From contig CDMY01000531.1 of NCBI GenBank assembly GCA_001179505.1, positions 62,001 to 126,000 of the forward strand: a stretch of DNA of 64,000 nucleotides, in the 5' to 3' direction. Below, one piece after another: positions 1,410 through 54,268 of the stretch (positions within the stretch are counted from its first letter, which is position 1; every line of letters begins with the position of its first letter). This DNA comes from Vitrella brassicaformis CCMP3155. Taxonomy: Eukaryota; Protista; Chromerida. The notes under the pieces are model-generated. The model worked only from the letters and a program-made list of their open reading frames with translations, was not told the origin of the DNA and ran no database searches. A program made the translations under genes and the position numbers.

Positions 1410-1552
1410 CTGTCATTCCTTCTCATTCTCTGCACTCAATTGTAAACGCATGCATGCGTTGCTGGGGGCACCCCCCGCCTTGACTGCGTCTCATTTCCAT
1501 CATCGCTGCATACGCACGTGCATATGTATACATGCGCTCGACTTCGATGTCG

Positions 1553-1823
1553 AAAATCGCTTCTAGCGCAAGAACGAGAAGGCCAATCGGCCAGGTTTTG
1601 AGTGGAGCGAAGACGCCATTCAATTCCCCACAACATAGGCAGATCGGATTTTCGAGAAACGTGTTCTGTGTGGAGTTTTCCCTAGGTCTACGTGAAGCCC
1701 TGTATGTCTGCCGGCACAAAATCGCTTCTAGCGCAAGAACGAGAAGGCCAATCGGCCAGGTCTTTCGCCTGTTAAGTGCCCCAGAGGGAGCCCGAAAACA
1801 TAGGCAGATCGGATTTTCGAGAA
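1553..1823. repeat. Two-unit 165-bp-period repeat: 44-bp block A, 35-bp variable spacer, 27-bp block B
   Basis: Block A (aaaatcgcttctagcgcaagaacgagaaggccaatcggccaggt) is identical at 1553-1596 and 1718-1761. Block B (aacataggcagatcggattttcgagaa) is identical at 1632-1658 and 1797-1823. Both spacers are exactly 35 bp but diverged. Confidence 0.9.
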
Positions 1824-3072
1824 CGGGTATTGTCTTGCGACATGCTCAAAAAGGTGGCGATTTGTCATAACCGCTCAGTTTGCTGTCGACGGCGGACGCT
1901 TCTATGGACAAACACCCAGCAAAAACCCTTGCCCCCACAACACGCGGGCTGCATCACAGTCAGCAGGCAGGCAGGCAGGCAGGCATGATGCTCATCCATT
2001 CCGACAGCCACCTGTCTGTCATCCAACTATATATATGTACCAGAAAGTGTGTGTCCATCCATCCTTCCACAACTGCAACGAGCCATCACACAAACGGCTC
2101 CTTGCAGTGGTGGGTGGCGAAGCTTCGCAGGCACACGATAGATACCCAGACACGCACAGCCAGACGCCCAAAAGGACGCTGCATCGGATAGATTCGTTGG
2201 CGTAGGTACGGAGGATAAGGCTAGCGCAAGGCTAGGCTGGGACTGGCAGGTGTGTGTGTGTGTAAACGTGCATCTCTCTCTCTCTGTTGTCTCGCGTGGG
2301 CTGCATGTCTGTCGTGCGTGAGGTGCTGGTGGCCAAGGCATTGGGTACGTCCACAACATTCCCATTTCACTCACGTACGCCGAAAACAGACAGACAGGCG
2401 AAAAAGAAGACACCACCCCACGACAACCAATCCCTGACGGCAGCCCCTCCGTGCGTATGTGTGTGTCTGTCTGTACACGTGGGTACGTGCGTTGAGTTCC
2501 CGACCCGTTTGTGAGCAGAGTGACCGCACCAGCCAGACGATACAAAACGACACTCACACATCCGATGGGAGCAGACAGGCAGACAGGCAGGCAGGCAGGC
2601 AAACGCGACAATAGAATGAGTTGACAGGCAGGTAGGCAGGTAGGCAGGAAGGGCAGACGATGTGATCAGAGAGAAGGAGAGAAGAAGAGAGAGGGGAAAA
2701 GGTCAGTGTGCTACGCGGCATTCAAGCAGAGGGGGCAGTGCTGAGTAGCACATTCCCTGGGAAATGACAGGCTAGAGAGACTAGAGAGAGAGGGGACAAG
2801 CCGCTTACACACATACAATACAGACAGTAGAGAAACACACTACAAAAGTCCATCCATCCATCCATCACTGCACAAGGCGACGGGAAAAAAACAAGTGCGG
2901 ACGGCGTACACAACATTCGATTACGCACACCTCGCCCAGCCACACCGCATGACAGCAGGGGAGAGAGAGAGAGAGAGAATATATGGGTTGCTTGCCAGCC
3001 AGCCGTCTATCCGAACAGGCCTGCTCCCCCAAGGCTGGTGGGCTGGATGGCCTGATCATGGACATGAATCTG

Positions 3073-3560
3073 TCAGCCATGATCATCGTCCGTTCGTGTG
3101 GGCTGCACACCTGGTGTTTCGACCAAGTAGGCGGGGGCCAGTGAGGGTCGGTATCGCTCCTGTACACGAGAGTGGCGGAGAAGATTGCCTGCATGAAGAG
3201 AAGGCACCACGCACACACCTGCCTGTATGCCGCTTCGCTGTCTTTGGGTTTGGGTGTCGTGTCGCTGGCCTACCAGGGAAGTGAGTTGCGGGTGGCAATA
3301 AGGCCCACGAGGCGTCCGTAGTGCATCGTCCTTCTCCTCTGCCCCCGACCTCAAGTCCTTCTCGGCCACCATTGCCACAGCACTAAGGGCCTCCACCAGA
3401 TCGGCAGTCGGTTGGTCCTCGATTGCCGGACCAGCAGTGTCCTTGCTGTCGGTGGTGGTCTTGATGGTGCTTAGGGCGAAAGGTGGGGCGGTGGACGATG
3501 TTGGAGGGATGATGGTGAGGTGAAAAGCGACTGAATCAGACAGCAAGTCCACTCCTGCAC
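3073..3560 (-). CDS. Probable terminal exons of a hypothetical protein (..TTTDSKDTAGPAIEDQPTADLVEALSAVAMVAEKDLRSGAEEKDD..)
   Basis: GC-rich codon-like ORF segments interrupted by a microsatellite-containing intron-like segment. No domain recognised; upstream exons uncertain. Confidence 0.4.
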
Positions 3561-3958
3561 GACAAGCACAGCAACCGATCGAACAATGAACGTCATCCAT
3601 CCCTCAATGCACTTGTGCGGATGGACTCTTCTGCTGTGGTCAATCGCTCACCGACTAGGGATCTGTCTGCACGGCACGGCAGACACATTGGCGTGAGCAG
3701 ACACACGAAGGGAAACTACACATGGTCACACAGGGGTATGGGGTGCGGCCTCACGATGGCTTCCTCTCTTACGTGTGTATATGCCTATCTGTGTGTGTGT
3801 GTGTGTTGGGGGTCTGTCTGTCTGTCTGTCCGTCTGTCTGTGTGTATGAAATGATGGCTGCGCTGCCCTTGACAACCAAGGCGTGCATCTGGGAGCCGTG
3901 CGTACGTACGTATCGACGCGTTCACATGTGTGTCTGTGAGCAGTTTGGGCGCCGATAA

Positions 3959-4020
3959 CCAAAACCGCGGGGCGTGCAGCTGCACGCCTGTGGACTGACT
4001 AGACCTGCCAAAACCGCGGG
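3959..4020. repeat. 13-bp direct repeats (ccaaaaccgcggg) flanking a perfect 18-bp palindrome ggcgtgcagctgcacgcc
   Basis: Repeats at 3959-3971 and 4008-4020; palindrome at 3971-3988. Confidence 0.85.
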
Positions 4021-5899
4021 ATCGACGAGGGGAGTCTGCAAAGGAATGGTGGACCAAAAATATGCAGTCAGTAGTACACAAGTAGTAAGTCAACATGAAC
4101 GCACAGCACACGGACATCACACACATGGCAAGTATTATCCAAGCCGCACACCACAGACAGCCGCCCCTTGACTGACGCCACCCATCCAGCCACCCACCCA
4201 TCAAAGAATGAATGGACCAGGCGAGCAAGTAGAAAGAAAGAGACGAGGAGCAGAAGAGGGCTGGTGGGTATGTGTGTATCAAATCGTCCGTTCATCCATT
4301 CATTCAGTCAGTCGCGCTGTCCTAGCTGCCTTTCTGCCTTTGCTCAGTCGGTCGGTCGGCTGATGTCACTCATCTGTGCATTCGTACGCCAATCGACGAA
4401 TGAATGGCGGCTGTATGCAATGCAGTCAGTCCACCAACGACCCGACCAGGGAGAGAGGGAGGGAGGGAGTGTGTATGACTGGCAGTCGCGGCCAGGACAT
4501 GGGCAGGGAGGGGGGGTCGCTCGTGTGCCCACCGCACCTGGTGTGTGGGTGTCGAAGGTAGAGGGTCGGTTGGGTATATCAGCAGCAGAGTAACAGTGGA
4601 GAAATGGCGTCATGCCTGTGAGCAAGCAGAGATAGAAGCGACAGAGACCGATGCGGACACGAAGGCCTCCGTGGTGTGGGCTGTGGGCGAGTGGGTGTAC
4701 TGGCTGCGTACCAGGTCAGCTAGGTGAAGTGGTTTGGTTGCCGGTCTGCGTCACGGCTGTAGAGCTCAATATTATGTGGACGCCCACCTGATGTGACCAC
4801 ACATCACCGAGGGAAGCAGCCATCCACCATGCACCCTCTCGGACAGTGCGTGTTGGTCGGTCTCCTGCCTTCCCCACCCCCCACTCACCTCTCTGTGGTG
4901 CGCCCGAGGTCGGATTGGTGCGCCGGGCTGTGTGGCGGCTGTTGCCGTGTGGCGAAGAGACTGGCGGTTGACGGCTCGTGACGGCGGGGTCTTGCCGGTC
5001 AGGGTGACCTCCTGTGCTGCCCCATGCGGCTGCAGGGTCGCAGGTGGCTCCGCAGCTCCTTCAGGGCGCTGACATTGAGGCCAGCAGTGTTGCCATAGCC
5101 CGACCAATGTCGGTCGACGCGCCTGAGTGGATCAATGAAAACAGCACACATTGAGCCATAGGGGAGGTGTCATTCTCTCGTAGCGGTTCGTTCCTCACCT
5201 GTGATCCACACAAGCCGCCCCTCAAAGGTCTCGTGGCTCCTTGCCATCGCTGTGCGAAGGTCGGAGTCCAAGAAGAGCATCATCAGGCCCCGGATGACCA
5301 CCGCCAGCAGCCACAGCCCAGCTGCACGTCGCGGCCGAGCCACAGGGTGTCGTAGAAGTGACGGATCACACATGACCTGAACGGATTCATAGACACATCA
5401 CACACACAGACAGACAGATGTTCCCGTCCTATGCCGTGCTGTATTCCCTCACTCACCACGCAGGCAGGCAGTGTGTAGGCGTGTGCAATGCTGGCTTGAC
5501 TTGCTCCCTCCCTCTTGGGTTCTTGAATGCGGCCGGCCTTCTGGTGGGCCTTTATTCGCTTCCTTTCCTTTTTCCGCAAAGGCGAGAGAGGTCAGAGAGA
5601 GAGGCAGACAAGGGCTAGGTAGAGATAGGGAGACCGACAGCACAGGCAGGACCCCCCAATCAAAACTCCCCCCCGCCACCACACACGCCCCTTAGGACAC
5701 ACGTGACAAGCTATGCGCAGCTGGATCGCTGGGTGGGTGAGGTGAGGGCCGAGAAAAAGGACGTCAGGGCACTCAACGCCTACGACGGACAGTGGTCCGC
5801 TAGTCGTCCTCTCACGAACCATGCATGGGTCATGATTGTCACCACATGAGAGTGAATTCGTCTGTCATCCATCCATCCATCCACCCACACCTGCACACA

Positions 5900-8624: not shown

Positions 8625-11600
8625 CTACGCACATGGGAAAAGCTCTGCATGCAGGAAAGCGAGACGCACATACACCCAGCATGCCAATGACACATCATCT
8701 GCTCTTCTTCCTCCCTTGCCTGATCTGCCTGTGTGTGTGTGTGTGTGTGTAAGTGTGTGTGTTTGTGTCGGTCTTGCCGTCCGTACCAGTCAGAACAGCA
8801 TGGCGGTACCTATCCAATAATTCCCACATGGCCTCGGGCGCCATCCCGTCAGCATGCCCCTTCCCCAGCTGCTTGTAAAGCTCCTGGCTTTTCTTGCGCA
8901 GGCTCCGGTTCTGCTCCTTGGCCTCCTCGCCCCAGCCCTCGACCTCTTTCTCTGCCCTCTTGTAGGTGTTAGCGGCAAAGTTGGCGATGCTGTCCACCTC
9001 CTTCCTGTACCGCCCCCGCAGCTCCCGGCGCGACTCCTCGAGCCGCTCGCCGCCCCCCTCTCGCTCGGCCTGCTTCGCGTCATTCCAGAGGCCCTGCAGT
9101 TGAATCTGGGCATCTATCCAGAGCATGTTGGCGGCACGGTCGCTTGGAGCGGCCAGCAGGAGGAGCGAGAAGGCCGCGCTCATGCAGTCCGTGGCGTAGG
9201 TCACCGTCTCGTCCTCAAACTCCCGCCCCTCCAGAGTGGCGTCGAGGTGGTGCGCCGTGGTGAAGGGGGGGCGAGGGCAGCTGACGAGACGGGGCTCGCC
9301 GGACTGAGCGCGGCCGTCGGGCTGCATCCTCCTGGACGCCTCCAGGTCGATGACCGTGATCTCGCCCTTCTCCACATCGGCCACCAGCACATTCTTGACG
9401 TGGAAGTCGTTGTGCGTCTTGTGGTGGCGGCGGTGGATGTGGAGAAGGGCTTCAACCAAGTTCACCGACACGGTGGCGCGCAGTAGGGGGCTGGGGCGAC
9501 TGTCGCGGGGCTCCTTGGGCCTGGCGAGGTCTTCGAGTGTGGGGGCGTTCATCTCCCCTGCAGGACACAAACGCAGCACAGACACACAACCACACAGACA
9601 GACATGAGCATTCGGTGTTTCTTTGTGCTGTGTATGCTGTCTGCCTACCGCTGCCGACTTTCGACATGATGAGGCAGACGCCGTCCTCGTCCACCTTGTC
9701 GGGCATGCGCTCGCCCTCGTCGGCGCCTCCCTGCCGCATCTCCCGTGCGGCGACCTTGCCCGCCGCCAGCTCCTCCGGTGTGAGGAAGCCGTACCACTGG
9801 GGCAGGTACCTCACCGACGAGGTGTGGCGGCGGCCGTGCAGCAGCTCGGGGAGCTGGTGCTGCCGGAACTCGCCGGCGCTCGTGCTGAGCTGCTGCAGGG
9901 CGTCGGACTCGCACTTGAGGGCGGCGCATACCTCCTCCCGATCCCCCTTGGTCTCGGCCATCACGTCGCGGTGCATCGACTTGGTGATGAAGCCCGTGCC
10001 AGCCGGGAAGGCCCCTTCCCCGGTGGCACGGGCCGCCCACACGTCGACGTCTACACGCGTCCCTTCACCGCCCACGAGCCGCCGGACGGGCACCATGGTG
10101 GCGAGCAGCGGGGGGTGGGTGCCGGTGCTGCTGGTGGTGGTGCTGGTGGCTGCTGGGCTGTCTGGGGCGTGGCTGGTGTGTGGGGGGGAGGGTGAGGATG
10201 AGGGTGAGGAGGGCGAGGAGGGCGGCGACGAGGGTGGGATGGTGGTGCATGTGGCTGCGGGGCTGCCCGTCGCGCTGTCGCCTCCGCTGCTGCTGCTCTG
10301 TGGTGGTGGGGAGGTGGGGAAGAGGGTCGCGGGTGGGGCAGGGGGCTCGGGTGGCGGTGAGGGCGGCGCCTCCGCCACCTCTGCAGGGGGTGCCGGGGGT
10401 GCAGCAGCCTCCACCACCACTGCACTACTCTGCTGTTGCGGCTGCTGCTGCTGCTGACCCTCACTCGCAGTCGGGCAGCCAGGGAGGGTGGCGGGAGGGG
10501 CAGAGGGCTGGGGAGAGGGCTTCAACTTGCCCTGAGCAAACGACACGCACGGATGACTTCCACATCTCCACCTGTGCATGTGTGCTGTGCACATGTGGCG
10601 TACCGTTTTTAGGAAGTAATACGTGTGTGAGTTGGCAATGGCGGCGCCGGTGGCGGTGATGGCCTTGAAGACCGTTGTCTTGGCGAGCAGCTCCCGCGTC
10701 TGCTTGAACTCCGGCACCCACCTGCTGCTGCGGTGCCGGTGCGGTCCACGGCCGCCGACCTGTCAACAATCGCATGGTGTGCAAGGCATGACACGTGAGA
10801 TGCAGACTAGTAGTGTGTGGTTGAGGGGTGAGGAGGGGATACGTACCTGTCCGCCGCACGGTGAGTCGTTGTTGGTGCTCGCGTTGCTGCTCTCCCCGTC
10901 CTTGTTGCTCGGCGCGCCGCTCGCCGGCAGCCCCTTATCATTGCCCTGACACATCCACCCACACACGCACATTTCCGTGGTGTGCTTTCTCCTCTGCCCC
11001 GCCCCTTTGGGCTAACTTTCTCACCTTCTGGCTATTGCTGGATTGGCTAGTCTCCGCGGCCATGACGGGTGAGGTGCCGCTGCCGCTCGAGTCCTTCCTC
11101 TCCCCTCCCTCGATCTGGTGCGAGCAGTCGGGCATCAGCTGCACCGACACCAACGCCTCCGACCTCACACTCACACCACCATTGCCATCCACCACCTGGC
11201 TGTCCACGCAGCCGTTGCCGCGGGTGGTGCCGAAGTGGATGGACTTGAACGGCGTGTTGCTGGCCGTCATGGGGTTCCACAGGTGGATCGACGTCTCAGT
11301 GCTGGGCAGCGTCTGGCCTGCAGAGAAGGAGGCAGAGAGGGGGCTGTGTGTGTGTGTGTGTGTGTGTGTTGGTGGTGGTGCTTTGCGTACCGGTCATGAG
11401 ATACGGGGACCCTGACAGCGACACCCACTGCAACACGTCCGTCGGCGGAATCTGACGATGCCAACAGACATCAAGATGGGCCGGCGGCGTGTGGGTGTCA
11501 CGGTCCATGTCCTTACGGTAGCGTCTTGTGCAATGAAGACCACTTTGGCCGGACCCAACGCCTCAGTCGACACGTCCCACACCGCAGCGAAACCTGATAC

Positions 11601-20208: not shown

Positions 20209-22347
20209 CGTGCGGCGGACAGGTACGTATCCTCTCCTCACCCCCTCAACCACACACTACTAGTCTGCATCTCACGTGTCATGCATTGCACATCATGCGA
20301 TTGTTGACAGGTCGACGGCCCTGCACCGCACCGTCGATGGGTGCCCGAGTTCAAACAAACGAGGGAGCTGCTCGCCAAAACGACGGTCTTCAAGGCCATC
20401 GCCGCGCCGCGATTGCCAACTCACACACATACTACTTCTTAAAAACGGTACGCCACATGTGCACAGGACACATGCACAGGTCCACATGTGGAAGTCATCC
20501 GTCTGCGTCGTTTTCATCGGCAGGTGAGGTCGATGTCCATCAACCGCCGCCGTCGCTGCCGAGGCTTGATGATGAGAGGTTTGCGTCGCCCCGGACGGCG
20601 AGGGCGGACCCGCCCAATGTCAAGATCAAGCCGCCTTTGCCGCGGGGGAGCCCTGAGAGGGATGCTGCTGGCCTGCACATCCCCTTCACCGGCCCCTTCG
20701 GCCCCTCCAGCCCCACGGGCAGCCACCCCCCACCCTCCTACCTCCCTCCCCGGTCCTCGCCGTCACAGGCCCCTCCACTGTCCTCCATAGGACACACTGA
20801 CAAGGCGCCAGACAGCCCGGCCAGCGACGCAGCAACCACCACCAGCACCACCACCCCACTGCCATTCCTCGCCACGCTGGAGCCGGGCCTGCAGCTTGCG
20901 GGTAGCCTCAGAGCGGTTCGCCAGGGGCAGAAGGCCGACGTCGACGTGTGGACGGCCCGGGCCACCGGGGAGGGGGCCACCCCGGCTGGCACCTGGGTCG
21001 TCACCAAGTCGGTGTCCGGCCTTGTGCAGGCCGGCGTGGGTCGGGAGAAGGTGCGGGCCGCCGTGCAGCGAGACTCGGACACGCTGCGGCTGCTGTACTT
21101 TGCCGCCAGCGAGTTCCGGCAGCACCGGCTGCCCGATCTCCTGCACGGCCGGCGCCACACAGGGGTGAGGCGGTGCGTGCCTGAGTGGCTGGGGTTCCTC
21201 AGCCAAGAGGAGCTGGCGGCGGGCAAGGCGGCGTTGAGAGAGACGCGGGAGGGAGGGACGGCCGTGAGTAAGCGCATGACGGACCTGGTGGCTGAGGAGG
21301 GGGTTTGTTACCTGATGGGCATGGTTATGGGCACGACGGACCCAAGTAAGTAAAGCGGGGCGGACAGGAAAGAAAGGAAGGAACGTGCCACACGTACGCG
21401 CGCACGAGCCGTCATTGTGTGTGTCATGCATGCAGTGGGCCAAGTGTGGGGTGCCGACACCGTGGACCACCTCTGCCGTCCCCCCATCCCCAGCCGCCGC
21501 CCCCCTGGACCGCTGCTGCGCGGCGCGGTGTCGGTGAACATGGTCCTCGCCCTTCTCCACATCCACCGCCACCACCACATCACACACAACGACTTCCACT
21601 ACCGCAATGTGCTCGTGGCGGATGTGGAGACGGGTGAGGTCATGGTCATCGACTTCGAGAGCGCGCGCCACATGCAGCCAGACGGCAGCACCCAAGATGG
21701 GGAGCCCCGTCTCGTCACCCCCTTCGCCCCCCCTTCACCACGGCGTACCATCTTGACGCCACTCTGGAGGGGCGGGAGCTGGTCGACGAGACGGTGACCT
21801 ACGCCACCGACTGCATGGGCGCAGCCTTCTCCTTCATACTGCTGGCCTCCCCGACAGCCGCCACCGCCAAGGCCGTCATAAAACTGGCCGAAACGGAGCT
21901 GGAAGAGCTCCTCAAGGGGTGCGAGGCGGCCCGCAGCCAGCAGGGCGAAGGGGAGGCGGCCCAGGCGACGCGCGAGGGCGCCAGGGAGGCATACAAGGCA
22001 ACAGTGGCCAGCATCGCAGCGGCGGCCAGCAGCCACATGGAACAGGCCATCGAGGCCTCTGAGCAGCCCGAGGCGGCCAAGCAGCAGTGGAAGGCCCTCT
22101 GCGCCCTCAGCGTCCAGCTGTATCGCGAGCTGGGGATGGGCCACGGAGATGGGATGGGGCAGGTGGAAATGTGGGCGAGACTGGATACTTTCTACCATGA
22201 TGTGATGACTGGTAAGACAACACACCCACACACACACACACACGGAGATCAGGCAAGGGAAGAAGAAGAGCAGATGATGTGTCATTGGCATGCTGGGTGT
22301 ATGCGTGTTTTGCTTTCCTGCATGCAGAGCTTTTCTCATCTGCGTAG
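20209..22347 (+). pseudogene. Inverted paralog of the kinase half of the 8625-13789 gene, lacking the WD-like part and carrying frameshifts
   Basis: Exons and introns are homologous (e.g. intron gtacgtatcctctcctcaccccctcaaccacacactactagtctgcatctc). Motifs HNDFHYRNVLV and VIDFESAR. 7-nt deletion near 20400 gives an early TAA, and there is a 1-nt deletion in a C-run at approx. 21714-21730. Same terminal exon (TELFSSA* vs TELFPCA*). Confidence 0.8.
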
Positions 22348-40100: not shown

Positions 40101-40400
40101 NNNNNNNNNNNNNNNNNNNNNNNNNNNNNNNNNNNNNNNNNNNNNNNNNNNNNNNNNNNNNNNNNNNNNNNNNNNNNNNNNNNNNNNNNNNNNNNNNNNN
40201 NNNNNNNNNNNNNNNNNNNNNNNNNNNNNNNNNNNNNNNNNNNNNNNNNNNNNNNNNNNNNNNNNNNNNNNNNNNNNNNNNNNNNNNNNNNNNNNNNNNN
40301 NNNNNNNNNNNNNNNNNNNNNNNNNNNNNNNNNNNNNNNNNNNNNNNNNNNNNNNNNNNNNNNNNNNNNNNNNNNNNNNNNNNNNNNNNNNNNNNNNNNN
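40101..40400. other. Assembly gap (300 N)
   Basis: Run of N. Confidence 1.
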
Positions 40401-41026
40401 CCCCCCCATGTTGAGAAGAGACGATGAATGAGAGTGTCGCAGTCAGCTCGACAAAGTCAGTAGGGATTTGACTTGCCCAATGGCATCGCATTGAATCAAT
40501 GAGTGGAATGCACTTCATCGACTGTCAGCGCACAAATGGACACACTGAGCAATGAGCATTGAGCAAATGGCGGCCCGTTGTCTGGTTTGAGGGGGGGCGG
40601 GGAACTGACTGTACACAACACACGCATGAAGCACTCAGTCCCTCACTCACTGACTCAGTCACTCACAAAGTGTCTCACTCACAAAGGAAACGAGCAAGTG
40701 TATCCCTTGCCGTGCACGCGGCCACCCCACCACACTTTACCAAGACACCGATCGTCCATCGGTCTCTTGAACGAGTGCAGTGATGAGGGCGCATGAGCAG
40801 CAAGGAACACACAGAAGGCCTGCAAAGCAAAGCGTGTATTACCGACATCCACACACAGTCAGACACAGGCAGACTGTTGTCTGTCTGTCTGTCTGTCTGA
40901 CTGTCTGCCCTTCTCTGTTCTGTTCTGCCCAGCTCCTCTGCCCTGCCAGCCTCTCTACATCGACAGAGGGTGGGTCGCTGTGTAGTTAGTATCGTCACAG
41001 ACAGATAGGGTAGCTGATCAGATCAG

Positions 41027-42373: not shown

Positions 42374-44138
42374 ATGGCTCCGCGTGCTTTCTGGCCGGTG
42401 CCTCTGTCGTGCAGCACTGAGCGAGTGTACTTTTTGGGCATCGTGTCTCAGCTGACGCGCACCATCTATGGGTGGAAGCAGCCGGGCCCGGAGCCGGTCA
42501 GCTACGCCATCCTGCAGAAGCAGGTCCTCGACATGGCCATTTACCTCACTGGTACTGTCACACTCAGACACGCCATGCCACAGGACGATCGATCTGCTCT
42601 GCTGCACGCAGCATTCGTGTGGCTGCCTGTGTGTGTGTGTGTGTGTGTGGTCCGGTGCTTTTCAGATCAGTGTTACTTCAGCATCACGACTTTGTCGGCG
42701 AGCATTGTGTATCTCCAAAAATTTCTCCAGTGGCTGTACGAGCAGCAGCGGACGGCTATCGTGTCGTTCGCACCACCTGTGAGTGGGGTGACTGGTGTCA
42801 GTGCCGGCAACGGCGGCGGGGTGTCGCCAATCCACGGACAGGCACACGCACACGCACACGCGCAGCAGGGGGAGCCGGTGGGGCGGGACTACGACTGGAA
42901 GTACCTCTGGCTCACGTGCATGGACATCGCCGAAAAGGTCAGCCACACACACGCCTGAGCGCTTTGATGCGTTCGCCCATTCCGTCCGTGCGTCTGTCTG
43001 TCTGTCTGTCTGCTAGATGTGGGAGGACAACTACATCCACCCGACCTTCCTGCGCGAGTGCGCCTCCCGCATCACCCGCCGCCCCTTCGACGGCCACACC
43101 CTCCTCACCTACCAGCGGGCCATCACATACGCCCTCGACTTCAAGCTCAACATCGACCCCAACGAGTTCGAGCGGGCGCTGGCGGGGTGGACGTCCAACA
43201 TCGACGCGTCGCTGATGGTGACGTTCCCCGAGGCCAAGAGGGTGTTCCGCCCGCGGCCCACTGAGGACCCCCGTGTGCTGTTCCAGTACGAGGCCGAAAA
43301 GGCGGAGATGGCACGGGTGAGCATGGAGAGAGGAGGAGAGAGAGATGGGAGGGGCGGAAGGTTTTTGTGGTTGGTTTGTTCAGACCAAGATGGCCAACGA
43401 CATGCAGAGCAAGATGCTCGTGACCTACATCCCCGGCGTGGTCACCCCCAAATCACACGTAAGCAAATGACAGACAACCACATGCCCACAGACAACCACA
43501 CACACCGGGCTCAAAGTTGGCGCTTGTGTGCCCATCCGGATATCGATCAGATGTCGCGCGTGCCGCCGATCGTCCCGAGTCTGCCGGTGACACTGCTGCC
43601 GTCGCCCAAGTCGTGTTCCCCCATCTCCCCCCACCCCTCCCTCTCCACCAGCAGCGGCTCGCCATCCGGCTACCCCTCATCCACAGGCAGCTCCCCGCCC
43701 AGCCACTACCCCGCCCCAGCACCAGCACCAGCACCCACCCCCCACACACATCAACATCACGCCCACTCACACGGACACCCCCACCCTCCCCCACACCCTG
43801 CACCCCACGCAGCGTTCCCCCACTTCCACCACCCGTCGCCAACCTCATGGATGGCCCCCCACACGGCCACGGCAGTGCCTGCTGTCATGTCTGCACCCCC
43901 ACTCAGTGTCAGCAAACGGGCGGAGCAGTACCGGGCCGCGTCGACGACATTCGCGCCGCATTTCCACCAGCACCCCCATGGCCACTGGGTGGGTGTGGGC
44001 GGGGGGATGGGTGGGGGGAGTTCGCCGCACAGCATGACGGACGGTGCTGGTGGTGGGAACCGGCCGGTGCGGCTGCCGGCCAACAGTGTGGTGGAGGGTG
44101 GGGCCAAGGGGTACTATCCCAAACACAGGGAGCAGTAG
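42374..44138 (+). CDS. Cyclin-fold protein (PHO80/cyclin-P/Y-like) with a Pro/His-rich C-terminal tail
   Basis: FSITTLSASIVYLQKFL and WKYLWLTCMDIAEKMWEDNY resemble the cyclin-box helices (..NW+RL.LT.L..ASK.WDD); LLTYQRAITYALDFKLNID resembles LN.LE..FL..LDF.L.V. Confidence 0.7.
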
Positions 44139-44776: not shown

Positions 44777-45076
44777 NNNNNNNNNNNNNNNNNNNNNNNN
44801 NNNNNNNNNNNNNNNNNNNNNNNNNNNNNNNNNNNNNNNNNNNNNNNNNNNNNNNNNNNNNNNNNNNNNNNNNNNNNNNNNNNNNNNNNNNNNNNNNNNN
44901 NNNNNNNNNNNNNNNNNNNNNNNNNNNNNNNNNNNNNNNNNNNNNNNNNNNNNNNNNNNNNNNNNNNNNNNNNNNNNNNNNNNNNNNNNNNNNNNNNNNN
45001 NNNNNNNNNNNNNNNNNNNNNNNNNNNNNNNNNNNNNNNNNNNNNNNNNNNNNNNNNNNNNNNNNNNNNNNNNNNN
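44777..45076. other. Assembly gap (300 N)
   Basis: Run of N. Confidence 1.
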
Positions 45077-45087
45077 TGCTTGTCGCT

Positions 45088-45133
45088 GCTGTGTGCTGTG
45101 TGCTGTGTGCTGTGTGCTGTGTGCTGTGTGCTG
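45088..45133. repeat. Heptamer tandem repeat (GCTGTGT)n, about 6.5 copies, next to the gap
   Basis: Direct reading of the sequence. Confidence 0.9.
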
Positions 45134-45729
45134 CCTGGCGGACGGATTAGAAGGAAGAAAGACAAGACGCGAGGATGGGTGTTTTTGTTTGTTCGTTGGT
45201 TCGTTCGGTGCGTGTGTGTGTCCGCGGGGTGGCATGAGAGAGAGGGTGCATTGTGTGTGTGTGTGTGTGTGCGTGTGTGTGTGTGTGTGTTTGTGTGTGT
45301 TTAGTCGTAGTCAGTGTCATACATACCATTATACCATTGCCATACACACTTGCCTGACTGCCTGCCTGAGTCTGTCTGTGCGTGTTTGCGTGTTCTGTGT
45401 GTGGAGCGGGGTCTGCGTATGAGTACACCTTTTCTGTTGACATTAACGATTCCACTGGTCAGTCAGCACATGCCGACCACCCATCCCTCCGCCCGTCACT
45501 CTTCTGCCTGTGTCTCTCCGCCTGCGTGTCGTGTGTCTTTAACTAAGTAACTAACGAGTACGCCGATCGATCCGACCAGAGGGGCGGGGGGGTGCTTGTT
45601 TTGCCTGATGCTGTTTATTCTATAATCGCTAAGCCATAACAAGCCACGCACACAGACAGACAGACGGTGTATGTCAAGTCGGTGTTTGATTTCGAAAAAC
45701 GGGGGATTCTTGTACCCACAGCTCATCGA

Positions 45730-45836
45730 TGAGGTTGGCGTGTGTTGAGTACGTCCGTCAGCGCCGCTACGGCGGCGGTTGGCATGCGCGCGGCCGTAGC
45801 AGCGCTGATGGAGGGGCGCAGCACACGCCAGCTTCG
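45730..45836 (+). ncRNA. Candidate structured RNA: 107-nt pre-miRNA-like hairpin
   Basis: Position i pairs with 91566-i from 45730 to 45777: 37 Watson-Crick + 6 G-U pairs, 5 symmetric mismatches, no bulges, 11-nt loop. The G-U pairs work only on the plus strand. Expression is not shown. Confidence 0.55.
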
Positions 45837-48800
45837 CTCGCTCGCCGGATGGGCGGACTTACTCTTTTTGCACCGACCGCCGTTGTGTCTGTCTATCTAC
45901 GGGTCGGTATGACGTGCAGCGTCACTTGATCACAACGGCGTCTGATGGGATGGAGCGAGGGAGGGGTTGATTGGGCGGCGGGGGGTGGGTGTGTCTTTAT
46001 CCTTTTCTCTCCGGATGGATGGTGTTTGCTGCTGCTGTGGCGGCTGTAGCTGCTGTGGCGTGATTGATGCGTTGCCGCGTCGTCGCGTGGTGTCGTTCGT
46101 ATTATGCATTGCGTGGCGAGGCGGATGGGATGGTGCGTGCAGTTTTTTCCCATAGTACACACACACAGACAGACACCACACGCCCACTCACAACCACACA
46201 CACATCCACACATCGACATATCAACACATCAACACATCCATCCATCGTATCTTCTTTGTTTCTATCGTCAAGTCAGTATTGTGTGTATTAGGACCTATTT
46301 CTTCGCCTTTGTTGGCTCTTTTAACAGGTCAGGGAGGGAGTGGGCGAGGCCTTCTCTTGCTTGCTCCTCTGCTTGCTTGCTCTGCTCTTGCTTCCTCCGA
46401 CAGGCTGGCAGGGCAGGCAGGCAGACAAAGAGGCAGACGGGCAGAGAAGGCAAGATGACACACCCAACGAAGGCAGACAGACAGACAGACAGACAAACAG
46501 ACACCGACAGGTAGGTGACTGGCTGGCTTTCCACCACACTCACACAGGGTAACGCAACGGTCCACAATGGCTCGGCTGGCTCACTCAGGCGTCCAGTCCC
46601 CATCTCTGTCTCTCTCGATCTGTGTGTGGTTGTGTGTATGCGTGTATGGTTGTGTGGATGCACCAAGGCAGCAAGCAGTCAGTGGCAGGTGTGTGTGTGG
46701 ATGAGTGTGGGTGGATGGGTTTCATCCTATTGTGTACTTCCATCTCTCTCTGTAAGTTGCGCGTAGGCAGCAGGTATGTCACGTCACTCCCTCTCTCTCC
46801 CTCCCTCTCTAATCACCTCTCACAGACGCAGGCAGGCAGGTCGGCAGACAGACAGACACAGGGGTCACAACCCCCTCCCTCCCTGCCTCCCTCTCTCCCT
46901 CCGTCCATCGCTCCGGGATGCTCCATATTCATATTCCTTTTTTTGTCATGGTCACACACACACACCCACAGCCATACACAGTCCACAGGCAGGTGTGTGC
47001 ACGACTGACCGACTGACTGACTGACTGCAATGCGTAAAGCAGGTTGCCTGTTCTCTCCCTCTGTGTGGGGTGTATGGCGTGTTGTGTGTCGTGTGTGTGG
47101 TCTGTCGAATCGACGGGGAATAGGGGGCGATCAGATCAAAAGCCGGATCGTGCGCCGCCTACCCCTCGTCGCTGCGTACTTGACATGACGGCTGGCTGAC
47201 CGACCGACCGACCAACGAAAGGTGTGTTGTGTACCTGAATGGATGGATCACTTTCTCTCCACTCTACTCGACTGTCTTGCTGGTGTGCTGTTTTTGGTGG
47301 GCTGCGGCACTGGTTGGCTGGTGATTTAGTAATTATGCAGGAAAGGTATACTGCATAGAATGGCTGGCTGTGGGCGGCGGGGGGGGATGGGTAAGGGGTA
47401 GAGAAAGGTAGGTAATTAGCGGGGGTGTCCGTACTACTCGACCTTCGCCCGTCCTTCGTTGACTACCGTACGTAAGATCAGGCAGACAGACAGACAGGCA
47501 GACAGGTTCCTTACACGCACACACACAGGTCTCTTCCGAGACTGGCGGACGATACAGGTTTTCTCTCTCCTGGTATCTCTCTCGGCCTGCCTCTCATATC
47601 TATCTGCTGCCTCTCCCAGTCCAATCCAGTGGAATCAACGAAGGTTTTGCCTCTCTATGTATGTGCCACCTTTACCTACACAAGACAGACAGGTTTTGAC
47701 TGACTTACTGCGTCCCCCTGTGAGCCACGTTTTGTTTTCCTCCATCTTATCTTAAGCACAGCACACACACCCACTCTGTCTGTCTATCGAACGAACACAC
47801 ACACGCCAACCTATTCCTTTTTTTCTGGGCCCTCTGTTCGCCCCCCTGTATGTGTGTAGACGAACAAACAGGTAGACGTTCAATGGTGCATGTGTGTCGT
47901 CACGTCCGTTGCTGGTTTGTTTGTGCCTCATAAAATGGTGAGGCTGTGCTGTGGCGTGTGTCCAATTAAGGGGCCTGGGGGGACGAAGGGGGGGTGGGAG
48001 GGAGGAAGGTCCGCTCGGAAAGTGTTTCCTGAGTGGACTGGACACTTGCCCGCCTCGTTGTCGTTGTGCACCGCACCCCAGCGCCACCAGACGACAAACT
48101 TCCCCTCCCCTCTCCCTTTCACCTCGATCGATTGATCGATAGATGGATGGATGGATGGATGGCCATGTTCACATACTTACACACACTCCCCTGGCACCCC
48201 GGACACACGTGTGTGTGTGTGTGTGTGTGTGCGTGTCTTGCTTTGCCCTCTCCCGTGCTCTGCTCTTCTCCACTCTGGTGATCTGACCTGTCCTTCCTGT
48301 GTCTCCACACATCAACAACACCCGACACACGCACACACACACACACACATGGATGGATGGATGGATGGACTGATTTGTCGGCGGGCCATGGTGGGCTGGT
48401 GGTGGTGGTGGTTGTTAATTAGCCAGGAAGGCGGTGGTACGGAAGTGATTTCGTCCGTACTAGTGAGGGTGGATCCATCCAGCCGTGGCAAAGTGACGAC
48501 ATCAGAGAGAGACAGAGAGAGAGAGAGAGAGGGAGAGGAAAGGTCGGCTGTACAGGTGGTTCGATGGTGCAGGTGAATACGGTGCGTAGCCCCGATTTCA
48601 GGGAGGCAGACAGGTGGGTGGCTATGATCTAATGGTTCGTGCGATGGATGGATGGATGGATATGAGTGAGATAACAGAGAGAGCCTCTCACTGCTGTTTT
48701 TCGCACCCTTTGTTTCAGATACCTACACGACACACGCACACACACAGAGGGAGAAAGAGAGAGAGAGAGAGAGGGAGAGATTGGTCTGGCATTCGTTGTC

Positions 48801-49788: not shown

Positions 49789-51892
49789 TCATATTGCGGG
49801 TCTGTCAACTCGGCTCATCTCACCTCGTCCCCTGCCCGGCATCATGCCGCCTCTGCCCATCATGGGCGGCCCACGGGGGCCTGGGCCGGGCAGCGCCTGG
49901 TTGTTGATCTCGCTACGGGGGTTGCGCACCGTCTCGTCAATCGACAGAATCAAACACGCAGCCTGCAAAGGCGCACAGGGGGGATGGATGGATGGATGGG
50001 GAGATGGGTGTGTGGAGGGTGTGTGGGGGAGGACCTCGGTGGCGCTGGCGATTGCGTTTTTCTTGACGAGTGAGGGCTCCCATATGTAGCTCTCGTAGGT
50101 GTCGCAGATGCCGCCGCCCAAACAGTCCACGCCGAACCAGCGCGTCTCGGCTGAGAACAGACAGGGAGCGGACACACGCGCCGTGCCCTCTGTGTCTGTG
50201 TCTGTGTGTCCCATACGTACGTTTGGCCTGGGCGTGCTTCTGTCGCAGCTTGTTGAGCAGATCGATGGCGTCCAAACCTGACATACATCATGTGGTGGCA
50301 CAGCACAAGTCAGTCAGCACACGTAATGAAATGACTGACAGCGTTGTGCCAGTTGTGTCACGGTGTGTTTGTGTGCCTGCCTACCCACCCACCTGAGTTG
50401 GCTGCAAGCGCTTTGGGGATGCACTCGAGCGCCTTGGCGTACGCGTTGATGACCAACTGCTGCTTGCCGCTGATCGAACGGGAGTACTCTCGCAGATACC
50501 GACTCAACTCCATCTGCACACACAGCCACACACATACAACCACCGTCCACACAGCGCCATCCATCCATTTGCTCACTGACCTCGATGGCGCCTCCGCCGC
50601 CCACGACGCAGTTGGATTTGATGGCGCGGCGGACTATCATGATGGCGTCGTGGAGCGACCTCTCGGCCTCGTCGACGAACTGCTGGGCGCCGCCGCGCAG
50701 GATGATCGTGGCAGACTTGGTCTGATCGATCAGACAGATTGGATGGATGAGTCGGTGTGGTGTGGTGTGTTGGTCGTTTGGCCATCATGTCTACCATACC
50801 CCCGGGCACTCCTTGAAGAGGTTGTATCGCTCGGATCCGATCTGGATCTCCTCAAACTCGCCACACGTGCCTGAAAGACAAGCACACAGGCAGGACATTC
50901 ATGCAGCGTCATCCTCATGGTGCCTGATTGCACTGCATGGTGACTCACTCACCGAGGACGTCAGGGGTGAGGTTGTGCACAGTGGTCTGGACGGCCGCCC
51001 CCGTCGCACGCTGCGTCCGGCGGACGTCCTGATGACACACACAACGCAGCAGGTGAACGACTCGCAACTGCCGTGGCTGCACTATGGCCTACCTGTTCCT
51101 CGACACGGCCGGCACAGAACACATCACGGTCTGCACAAGGGAGGAGGAGTCGATTGAGCTCGGAATCGTCGTGCATGTGTGTGGTCTGGCTGGCTGACCG
51201 GCGAAGTACTGTGTGGCGAGGTCGCCGATCGGCAGCCGACTTAACACAACTGACGTATGGTATGGATGGACAAGGGAAGAGAATCCAGACGAGTGAGTAT
51301 CTGGCATCCATCCATCCGTCCATTGCTTCCTTACCCTTGGCGCCGCTCTTGACGATGCACTCGAGCTTCTCGTAGATGATGTGCCACTCAGCGTCGATGA
51401 TCGCCTGGTAATCCTGCACACACACGCACACGCACCCACGGACGGACTTGGATGGAGGTGCAGAAGGGTGGGCGTGGCGTGCATTGCCCGAGTGAATCGT
51501 ACCTCTGGTGAGTTGATTCTGATCTCTGCGTTGTCCTTCTCTGCTTTCAGTTCCAGCTCCAGGTTGAGCAGCAGGATCTTCGGGTGCTCGAACCTCTTGG
51601 GCTGCTGCTCAAAACCTACACAACATACAGAAAACACATGACATACACTCGAGTGCAGATGAGATGGATGGAGAGGGGATGAGTGGGCCGCTCACCGGCG
51701 TAGGAGAATGTCTTCTTGAACGCCACGCCCTTGACCAGGAGGGAGTCCTGAAACACACACCCAGCGACACACTGAGGATGCGCACTAAGGCGGCATGAAT
51801 GGGATGTGCTCTCTCACCGTGACCGATCCCCCGGTGACCTTCTTGAGGCCAATCATGTCCTGCAGCAAAGGTACCGACGTAGCAGACGTGTA

Positions 51893-52956: not shown

Positions 52957-53164
52957 GTTGGCGGCTTGAAACGAACGCGGAGGAGATCCAGCTCAACCTC
53001 AGTTGCTGCCCGCTGTTTCTTCTTCTCCTTCCAAGCAAGCTCAGCTGCGAGCTCAAGGCAGATCTCCCTCCCGCATTTCTCCTTCCATTGGACTGATTCC
53101 CTCTGTTGCAAATGATGAGAGAGCCCATGCACCGACTCAGGAGTATCGATTGCGCCGCAATTTG

Positions 53165-54268
53165 ATGATGGAGGAGCTGCAGAAGCGAGTTGAGCAGCTC
53201 GAGGGTCAGCTTGCGGAGCTGACCCTTCCAGATGCCGCCTCATCGAGTGCCTACACCGACGTGGCCGAGCGGGAGATCCGCATGCAGGCGCAAGAACACA
53301 TGAGGACACAGGCTCGGTTGGTGGAGGTCCTCACAAGTGACCGAGATGAATGGAAGATGCGGTGTAAGCGGCTTGAGGCGGAGTTGGCCGAGCTGCGTGC
53401 AGCGAGTGACCGTCAGCCCGTCGAGCTCATCCTCGATGACGGCAGCAAATACTATGGCCGCGTCAAGAACGGTCGCCCACACGGCCCCGGCAAGCAGACC
53501 GACATGGACAGGCACAAGAAGATCTACGAGGGGCAGTGGGCTGATGAGAAGTATGACGGCGTCGGTGTGTGTTATCATGGCGACGGCGAGACCAAGAAGT
53601 ACGACGGCCAGTGGACAGCCGGCAAGTACCATGGTCAGGGCGTCAGCTACGATCAGAATGGCACCAAGGAGAAAGAAGGACAATGGGTAGACGGCAGGAT
53701 GCACGGCCAGGGCACCAGCTACCGCGCCAATGGCAAGATGGAGTATCAGGGGCATTGGGTGAGTGGCAAGTATGACGGCCAGGGCACCCAGTACGACTCA
53801 AGCGGCTCGGAGCTCTACCGGGGCGAATGGCGGGAGGGACAGATGCACGGCGAGGGCTGGATCAGCAGCATCACGTGGGGAGGCAGCAAAGACACCGGCC
53901 CGCTGCTCGACGGCCAGCCTCATGGCCAGGGGATCAGCTATCATCAAAACGGCAAGAGGGCGTACGAGGGCCAGTGGCGGTGCGGACACAAGCACGGGGA
54001 GGGCATCTCGTATCACGATAACGGCGAGAAGGAGTACGAGGGAGGGTGGGAGAATGGGGAGTGGCACGGCCAGGGCACGGCCAGCTGTCGCTCCCTCGGC
54101 CCTGTGTTCGAGGGGCGGTTTGCCAGGGGGACGGCGACATGTGGGACGTTTTACTCCGGCTGTGTGGCAGAGCAGCAGTGGCGAGCTGGTCAGGCAATCG
54201 ACATACATGTCGAATGGGGGCTGCTAGCGGACTGCGGAGGCATTCCTGACTGGGTGCCCAATATATGA
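53165..54268 (+). CDS. Intronless MORN-repeat protein with an N-terminal coiled coil
   Basis: Single uninterrupted ORF; about 9-10 repeats of the type YEGQW..GKYHGQG.SY..NG; N-terminal MMEELQKRVEQLEGQLAEL..CKRLEAELAELR. Confidence 0.9.
   Translation: MMEELQKRVEQLEGQLAELTLPDAASSSAYTDVAEREIRMQAQEHMRTQARLVEVLTSDRDEWKMRCKRLEAELAELRAASDRQPVELILDDGSKYYGRVKNGRPHGPGKQTDMDRHKKIYEGQWADEKYDGVGVCYHGDGETKKYDGQWTAGKYHGQGVSYDQNGTKEKEGQWVDGRMHGQGTSYRANGKMEYQGHWVSGKYDGQGTQYDSSGSELYRGEWREGQMHGEGWISSITWGGSKDTGPLLDGQPHGQGISYHQNGKRAYEGQWRCGHKHGEGISYHDNGEKEYEGGWENGEWHGQGTASCRSLGPVFEGRFARGTATCGTFYSGCVAEQQWRAGQAIDIHVEWGLLADCGGIPDWVPNI

What the first reader, a model, noticed from the sequence alone, without database searches (positions are those of the whole stretch)
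45730..45836. 107-nt near-perfect, strand-asymmetric hairpin: candidate pre-miRNA / small-RNA gene in a chromerid-like genome
Seen: every base i from 45730 to 45777 faces 91566-i in one register with no bulge. There are 37 Watson-Crick pairs, 6 G-U pairs (45730, 45733, 45735, 45745, 45750, 45757), 5 isolated 1x1 mismatches and an 11-nt loop. The six G-U pairs would be A-C mismatches on the minus strand, whereas only one mismatch would be rescued there, so the pattern favours selection on a plus-strand RNA rather than a DNA palindrome or MITE. The sequence is non-repetitive and lies in a gene desert. A 14-nt exact complement of the 5' arm (acacacgccaacct) occurs at 47799-47812, though it is partly CA-repeat. 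Established: such stems with symmetric mismatches are typical Dicer substrates; Toxoplasma and dinoflagellates keep Argonaute/Dicer-type machinery while Plasmodium lost it. Inference: an undescribed miRNA-like locus.
Basis: partly seen in the sequence, partly recalled or inferred. Interest (0 to 1): 0.82.

Follow-up and report, generated by a model that had tools for sequence, protein, structure and literature searches.

The report
Long single-copy RNA-type hairpin in Vitrella
The 107-base hairpin is real, unique in the genome and one of many such hairpins in the alga Vitrella brassicaformis, which has the enzymes to cut hairpins into small regulatory RNAs. No expression data could be obtained, so "microRNA-like gene" remains a reasonable but unproven reading.

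Summary
The plus strand folds at -84.1 kcal/mol (z -10.9) and the minus strand at -62.3. It is the strongest fold in the window, single-copy in the 72.7-Mb genome (Vitrella brassicaformis CCMP3155), non-coding, and matches no Rfam family. It is not a MITE.

6 G-U against 1 A-C gives p about 0.06, and about 0.25 once the strongly G+T-rich flanks are allowed for. An energy-based neutral-decay simulation gives p about 0.015 to 0.03. The 14-nt "target" match is chance.

New here: such hairpins are a population. In 264 kb of this contig, 8 to 9 complex-sequence inverted repeats passed the finder, against 0 in shuffles, 0 to 1 mirror repeats and 1 to 3 direct repeats. Their strand asymmetry exceeds neutral decay (combined p 0.0007). 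Most that I checked are single-copy. One four-member family keeps its pairing through compensatory changes.

The genome encodes Argonaute, tandem RNase III (Dicer-like) and RdRP. The scan has noted similar hairpins elsewhere in this genome (s1-197163, s1-233327, s1-197253).

Odds: small-RNA precursor about 0.4, neutral palindrome about 0.35.

The parts
45730..45777 (+). 5' arm of the hairpin (48 nt)
   Evidence: Ungapped pairing with 45789-45836: 37 WC + 6 G-U of 48
45778..45788 (+). 11-nt terminal loop. RNAfold closes two more pairs inside it, leaving 6 unpaired bases.
45789..45836 (+). 3' arm of the hairpin (48 nt), G-enriched. 8 of the 11 non-Watson-Crick positions carry a G on this arm.
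45727..45840 (+). Full predicted stem-loop including a 3-bp basal extension (114 nt; -86.4 kcal/mol on the plus strand, -63.7 on the minus strand)
45865..45869 (+). Run of five T, 29 nt after the 3' arm. Possibly irrelevant: other hairpins of the class have no such run.
   Evidence: read; flanks of the other hairpins

Best explanation
The locus is a single-copy, non-coding, imperfect inverted repeat. When transcribed from the plus strand it forms a 48-51-bp hairpin. It belongs to a population of roughly 100-165-nt, mostly single-copy hairpins spread through the Vitrella brassicaformis genome, whose pairing is better on one strand than neutral decay predicts. The most likely mechanism is inferred, not shown. 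The hairpin would be part of a longer plus-strand transcript. A Dicer-like tandem RNase III enzyme would cut it into about 20-24-nt duplexes, which would be loaded into an Argonaute. [quoted passage not shown] Shown here: the structure, its uniqueness, its non-coding position, the existence of the hairpin population, and the presence of RNAi genes. Inferred: transcription, its strand, processing and any target.
For: Structure: -84.1 kcal/mol, z -10.9, best of the window. Isolated 1x1 mismatches only, with no bulge. Single-copy. Under a neutral-decay simulation using flank composition, the plus strand is more stable than expected: P(E+ <= -84.1) = 0.018, and P(dE <= -21.8) = 0.015. Hairpin population in 264 kb of the same contig: 37 GC-corrected RNAfold outlier clusters, against 0 in 119 kb of shuffled sequence. 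A strand-neutral finder gave 16 inverted repeats of score >= 16, against 0 in three shuffles. Among complex sequence it gave 8-9 inverted repeats, against 0-1 mirror repeats and 1-3 adjacent direct repeats. The strand asymmetry of these strand-neutrally chosen hairpins exceeds neutral decay: Fisher p 0.0007, or 0.002 without this locus. GT/AC overdispersion has p 0.002-0.009. A four-copy hairpin family keeps its stem, with 5 pairs changed on both sides. RNAi toolkit: Piwi + PAZ on C537 and C309, tandem RNase III on C473 and C376, and RdRP at four or more loci. Two runs that the tool guesses to be RNA (contig sets of only 25-28 Mb, from a multi-organism study) hold 85% and 77% of the words of 45077-47500. 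Vitrella's median intergenic distance is 92 bp, so most non-coding DNA is transcribed (PMC4501334). Toxoplasma precedent: PMC2877743.
Against: No paralog or ortholog exists, so covariation cannot be tested for this locus. The G-U count asymmetry is not significant once the G+T-rich flanks are considered. No complementary target was found in the genome, and the 14-mer match is chance. The class-level statistics come from one contig and 8-14 hairpins. After composition correction the count-based test is only p 0.03-0.08. An estimated several thousand such hairpins per genome is more than typical miRNA gene counts.
Confidence: 0.4

Rival explanations
1. A neutral, decaying DNA palindrome. A once-perfect inverted duplication, for example from a replication template switch or foldback repair, has since picked up about 11 substitutions under the local G+T-enriching mutation pressure. 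It has no function as RNA.
For: Template switching is a documented source of perfect hairpins (PMC10710096, PMC8794818). The flanks have a keto skew of +0.18. All 11 non-Watson-Crick positions are the kind produced by drift toward G or T on the plus strand, so the 6:1 G-U bias is not significant. There is no homolog, no target and no expression evidence. The absence of indels at 23% arm divergence is not unusual.
Against: Simulated neutral decay reaches the observed plus-strand energy or strand difference in only 1.5-2% of trials. Hairpins chosen without regard to strand show excess strand asymmetry as a class. Few of them are young: 1 of 9 has more than 90% Watson-Crick pairing, though that is not significant. 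A hairpin family keeps its pairing through double changes.
Confidence: 0.35
2. A cis-acting structural element of a longer plus-strand transcript, such as a long 3' UTR of the upstream plus-strand gene or a non-coding RNA. It would affect stability, 3'-end formation or protein binding and would not be diced into guide RNAs.
For: A coding-looking plus-strand ORF begins at 43017 upstream. Several class members lie 100-660 nt downstream of the end of a long same-strand open frame. The genome is very compact and UTRs are assigned to most genes. The class-level evidence for strand-specific pairing fits any RNA role.
Against: This hairpin is at least 1.6 kb plus a scaffold gap of unknown size beyond that ORF, which is long for a Vitrella UTR. 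The positional pattern is noisy and was not tested for significance. The hairpins share no motif.
Confidence: 0.15
3. A DNA-level element: a cruciform-forming site for replication, recombination or protein binding.
For: It is a strong palindrome on both strands (minus strand z -7.8) in an ORF-free stretch.
Against: A DNA function predicts no strand asymmetry, yet both this locus and the class show it. Eleven mismatches weaken cruciform extrusion.
Confidence: 0.05
4. A MITE or other transposon relic, or an assembly artefact near the scaffold gap.
For: The hairpin lies 650 nt from a 300-N gap. MITEs fold into such stems.
Against: It is single-copy even at E <= 10 and has no flanking target-site duplication. 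The surrounding 5.8 kb is unique. An artefactual palindrome would be perfect, not 77% Watson-Crick. The 2.4-kb stretch is held by 8 runs from 4 studies.
Confidence: 0.03

Closest known systems
Imperfect fold-back small-RNA loci and miRNA genes of Toxoplasma gondii (Braun et al. 2010, PMC2877743)
   Same: It comes from the same wider lineage (chromerids are the free-living sisters of Apicomplexa). Both are single imperfect hairpins scattered in the genome, and both genomes carry Dicer, Argonaute and RdRP.
   Different: In Toxoplasma the small RNAs were cloned and shown to bind AGO. Here no RNA has been seen. There is no sequence similarity, and this stem (48-51 bp) is long.
Plant and Chlamydomonas-type MIRNA precursors (long, near-perfect hairpins); Rfam MIR839 was the only weak hit
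   Same: A long unbranched stem with isolated mismatches. Free energy per nucleotide, normalised for GC, is about 1.1, in the range I recall for plant precursors (from memory, not tested here).
   Different: The Rfam score is 29.1 bits against a gathering score of 200, so this is a generic long-hairpin resemblance and not membership. No mature/star duplex is known and no complementary target was found.
Template-switch-generated hairpins (Monttinen et al. 2023, PMC10710096; Monttinen and Loytynoja 2022, PMC8794818)
   Same: An isolated, single-copy inverted repeat with a short spacer in otherwise unique DNA. This is a proposed birth mechanism for new miRNA genes.
   Different: Those events are recognised by comparison with an outgroup that lacks the inversion, and no outgroup is available here. 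This hairpin is already 23% diverged between its arms.
MITEs
   Same: They fold into miRNA-like stems.
   Different: MITEs are multi-copy with terminal repeats and target-site duplications. This locus and three other hairpins I tested are single-copy.

Membership tests
miRNA / miRNA-like gene | Unbranched hairpin in which a 21-nt duplex has few mismatches and no large or asymmetric bulge | tested here: met
   48 ungapped positions, only isolated 1x1 mismatches, several 21-nt windows with 4 or fewer non-WC positions
miRNA / miRNA-like gene | The precursor strand is transcribed | tested here: inconclusive
   No holder is on record as RNA.
miRNA / miRNA-like gene | A dominant 20-24-nt species plus star strand with 2-nt 3' overhangs (precise Dicer processing) | not testable with these tools
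   No small-RNA data could be reached. The paper library holds no paper on chromerid small RNAs.
miRNA / miRNA-like gene | The genome encodes Dicer-type RNase III and Argonaute | tested here: met
   Piwi 56.8 bits + PAZ 30 bits on C537, and Piwi + PAZ on C309. Tandem RNase III domains on C473 and C376. RdRP at four or more loci. The Dicer dimerisation domain was not found, and that search's own control was uninformative.
miRNA / miRNA-like gene | Conservation or compensatory change in relatives or paralogs | not testable with these tools
   Single-copy, 0 metagenome matches, and no related genome on hand
Rfam MIR839 (RF04168) | Score at or above the gathering threshold | tested here: not met
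   29.1 bits against 200. Nothing in the whole window reaches gathering score.
MITE / foldback transposon | Multiple genomic copies with terminal inverted repeats and target-site duplications | tested here: not met
   One copy at E <= 10, no flanking direct repeat, unique surroundings
Template-switch palindrome | An ancestral, non-inverted state visible in an outgroup | not testable with these tools
   No outgroup sequence available

The most novel reading that the evidence does not exclude
Vitrella brassicaformis carries a large repertoire, extrapolated at about 2,000-5,000 per genome, of mostly single-copy 100-165-nt hairpins selected to pair as RNA on one strand. This locus would be one of them. 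They would feed a Dicer-like/Argonaute/RdRP pathway, making this the first small-RNA gene system described in chromerids and a view of the RNA-silencing state ancestral to Apicomplexa.
Probability: 0.3. Interest if true: 0.7.

Novelty: new member of a known kind. Interest (0 to 1): 0.42.

Why it matters
Chromerids are the free-living photosynthetic sisters of apicomplexan parasites. The searched library holds no paper on small RNAs in Chromera or Vitrella, and the genome paper does not mention them. If hairpins like this one are Dicer substrates, they would show what the ancestral apicomplexan silencing system looked like. They would also give a ready list of loci to test. On its own, though, this single locus is just one well-formed hairpin without expression evidence.

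Tried and rejected
There is no read evidence. Later genome searches started at 45140 or later. Local scripts did read the whole window file for folding and repeat statistics.
2. The look-up of encoding contigs with three ORFs near the hairpin returned nothing on record.
3. Two metagenome scans with the hairpin core returned 0 matches.
4. Rfam at E <= 1 gave only MIR839 at 29 bits against a gathering score of 200. Nothing reached gathering score, and there are no tRNAs.
6. The 14-nt antisense match as a target hint is rejected as chance.
7. A genome search with the hairpin at E <= 10 found no other match, hence no target with extended complementarity. Its sensitivity for about 20-nt matches is limited.
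8. MITE is rejected (single-copy).
9. I looked for a motif, splice sites or T-runs shared by hairpin flanks and found none that was consistent.
10. A runs count by hand for same-strand clustering of neighbouring hairpins gave 11 runs against about 10 expected, so no clustering.
11. The Dicer dimerisation domain search gave no hit, and its control was uninformative.

Full report
**Identity of the genome**

The window is G000:C531:62001-126000 of an assembly of 72,700,666 bases in 1064 contigs. These are exactly the figures published for Vitrella brassicaformis CCMP3155 (PMC4501334). Earlier follow-up notes of this scan name the same organism.

**The observation**

- Position i in 45730-45777 faces 91566-i with no bulge.
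- There are 37 Watson-Crick pairs.
- There are 6 G-U pairs, at the six positions listed.
- There are 5 isolated mismatches.
- The loop is 11 nt.

RNAfold gives -84.1 kcal/mol on the plus strand (z -10.9) and -62.3 on the minus strand (z -7.8). Three further pairs extend the stem to 45727-45840.

It is the longest inverted repeat in the window. It is also the lowest-energy 110-nt window of the 64 kb on either strand. The binomial chance of 37 of 48 Watson-Crick pairs at local composition is about 3e-14.

**What it is not**

- **A known RNA family:** the only hit at E <= 1 is MIR839, at 29.1 bits against a gathering score of 200. That is a generic long-hairpin match. Nothing in the window reaches any gathering score, and there is no tRNA.
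- **A MITE:** the genome holds one copy even at E <= 10. There is no flanking direct repeat. The surrounding 5.8 kb is unique apart from microsatellites and one 366-nt paralogous patch.
- **Coding sequence:** only short ORFs of 33 to 66 aa lie over the hairpin. No ORF of 180 aa or more lies between about 44.2 and 51.0 kb. The ORFs tested there have no Pfam hit. The nearest recognisable gene is a MORN-repeat ORF at 53003-54268.
- **An assembly artefact:** a scaffold gap (44777-45076) lies 650 nt upstream. An artefactual palindrome would be perfect, whereas this one has 11 non-Watson-Crick positions.

Vitrella's median intergenic distance is 92 bp, so a stretch of about 7 kb without ORFs is unusual for this genome.

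**The strand-asymmetry argument for this locus**

Of the seven transition-type non-Watson-Crick positions, six are G.T on the plus strand and one is A.C. On its own that is p = 0.06 one-sided.

The 600 nt on each side are strongly G+T-rich on the plus strand. The keto skew is +0.18, against a contig mean of -0.003 (sd 0.056). With flank composition the expected G.T share is 0.66-0.68, and the p rises to about 0.25. The four other mismatches are A.G, A.G, G.G and G.G, which is the same drift toward G. By counts, then, the asymmetry is not evidence for RNA-level selection.

I also simulated neutral decay. Starting from a perfect palindrome, I applied 11 substitutions drawn with flank composition and a twofold transition bias.
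- The plus-strand energy reached the observed value in 1.8% of trials.
- The plus-minus difference of -21.8 kcal/mol was reached in 1.5% of trials.
- A second run gave a two-sided p of 0.033.

This is suggestive, not decisive.

**The supposed target**

The 14-mer complement at 47799-47812 exists. However, 23% of random 107-nt segments of this window have an antisense 14-mer elsewhere in it, because of CA-rich low complexity. A genome search with the hairpin at E <= 10 found no other match.

**A population of hairpins**

I scanned the window plus 200 kb of the same contig (L012-L031) with RNAfold. After correcting for GC, 37 clusters of windows lie more than 3 residual sd below expectation. None did in 119 kb of block-wise dinucleotide-shuffled sequence. 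Eighteen of the clusters are unbranched hairpins with 40-66 pairs.

I then used a finder that scores G.T and A.C equally and is therefore blind to strand.

| Repeat type | Score cut-off | Count in 264 kb |
|---|---|---|
| Inverted, all sequence | >= 16 | 16 (0 in three shuffles) |
| Inverted, complex sequence only | >= 20 / >= 16 | 8 / 9 |
| Mirror, complex sequence only | >= 20 / >= 16 | 0 / 1 |
| Adjacent direct, complex sequence only | >= 20 / >= 16 | 1 / 3 |

The hairpin configuration itself is enriched.

For these strand-neutrally chosen hairpins, three results bear on strand asymmetry.
- G.T/A.C counts are over-dispersed: p 0.002-0.009 at an expected share of 0.5, and 0.03-0.08 after composition correction.
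- Their strand difference in folding energy exceeds simulated neutral decay: Fisher p 0.0007, or 0.002 without this locus.
- Favoured strands differ from hairpin to hairpin.

A second example lies in this window at 40698-40812. It folds at -69 kcal/mol on the minus strand and -48 on the plus strand.

Three further strong hairpins are also single-copy. One hairpin has three relatives, at C531:147804, C299:68683 and C395:86389. The four-sequence alignment keeps the stem, with five pairs changed on both sides.

Extrapolation from one contig gives a few thousand such hairpins per genome, which is only a rough figure. Several lie 100-660 nt after the end of a long same-strand open frame. That is a lead, not a result.

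**RNA-silencing genes**

- **Argonaute:** Piwi domains occur at six places. Two of them have a PAZ match nearby: C537:21682-24174 and C309:28486-32133.
- **Dicer-like:** RNase III occurs at four loci. Two of them have two RNase III domains in tandem: C473 (L006) and C376 (L007).
- **RdRP:** it occurs at four or more loci.
- **Dicer dimerisation domain:** it was not found, but that search's control was uninformative.

**Expression**

The look-up of sequencing runs listed eight holders from four studies, none on record as RNA. Two are guessed to be RNA. They have contig sets of only 25-28 Mb, come from a multi-organism study, and hold 85% and 77% of the words of 45077-47500. That hints the stretch is transcribed, but I could not check it.

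Three look-ups by encoded ORF and two metagenome scans found nothing.

**Literature**

The library holds no paper that links Vitrella or Chromera with small RNAs, Argonaute or Dicer in substance. The genome paper does not contain the terms searched: "small RNA", "RNAi", "non-coding".

[quoted passage not shown] Replication template switching is a documented source of new hairpins and new miRNA genes (PMC10710096, PMC8794818).

**Verdict**

| Reading | Odds |
|---|---|
| Small-RNA precursor hairpin (miRNA-like or hairpin-siRNA) | about 0.40 |
| Neutral, decaying palindrome | about 0.35 |
| Cis-acting RNA structure of a longer transcript | about 0.15 |
| DNA-level element | about 0.05 |
| Transposon relic or assembly artefact | about 0.03 |

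The miRNA-like reading is plausible, and the class-level evidence and the RNAi toolkit strengthen it. Its defining features, transcription and precise small-RNA processing, are untested.

The scan has seen the same kind of object before on other DNA of this genome (s1-197163, s1-233327, s1-197253).

Noticed in passing
window 40698-40812 (minus strand): A second long single-copy hairpin, 115 nt with 47 pairs. It folds at -69 kcal/mol on the minus strand and -48 on the plus strand (z -7 for 40690-40820). It has 8 G-U-type positions favouring the minus strand against 2 for the plus strand, and lies just after the scaffold gap at 40101-40400.
   Followed up: partly
contig C531: 11984-12149 (L013:1984-2149), 48477-48627 (L016:8477-8627), 51465-51574 (L017:1465-1574), 173290-173449 (L022:7290-7449), 259384-259484 (L031:3384-3484) and others: A population of 100-165-nt unbranched hairpins with 40-66 pairs, 18 of them in 264 kb. 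Many favour one strand strongly (for example -95.9 against -70.1, and -91.7 against -64.6 kcal/mol). None was found in shuffled controls.
   Followed up: partly
L032:1537-1690, L033:1548-1677, L034:~1447-1600, L035:~1478-1631 (minus): A four-member hairpin family on three contigs (C531 twice, C299, C395). The two C531 copies are 83% identical. The stem is kept, with five pairs changed on both sides (alignment A1).
   Followed up: partly
window 45140-47500: The plus strand is unusually G+T-rich (keto skew +0.18 around the hairpin, about 3 sd above the contig mean). The stretch is full of CAGA, CA, CT and GGAT microsatellites, inside an ORF-free stretch of about 7 kb, in a genome whose median intergenic distance is 92 bp.
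   Followed up: partly
G000:C537:21682-24174, C309:28486-32133, C473:56.5-58.1 kb (L006), C376:337.8-339.3 kb (L007), C246, C91, C338, C379: RNA-silencing toolkit: Argonaute (Piwi + PAZ), two loci with tandem RNase III domains (Dicer-like), and several RdRP genes. One RdRP locus (C246:116-118 kb) has several in-frame stops.
   Followed up: partly
window 49914-50279: A 366-nt stretch 70% identical to C277:46228-46607. It is the only non-microsatellite repeat in the 5.8 kb after the hairpin and is possibly an exon of a paralogous gene.
   Followed up: no
window 9364-9450 and 21545-21639: Two inverted repeats inside GC-rich long open frames share the same arm motif, so they are probably paralogous coding segments rather than RNA hairpins.
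   Followed up: no
window 45621-45626 and 45865-45869: A TATAAT about 105 nt upstream of the hairpin and a run of five T 29 nt downstream of it. The layout recalls a small polymerase-III-type unit, but other hairpins do not share it.
   Followed up: no
window 40101-40400 and 44777-45076: Two 300-N scaffold gaps. The true distance between the hairpin and the upstream plus-strand ORF (43017-44138) is therefore unknown.
   Followed up: yes
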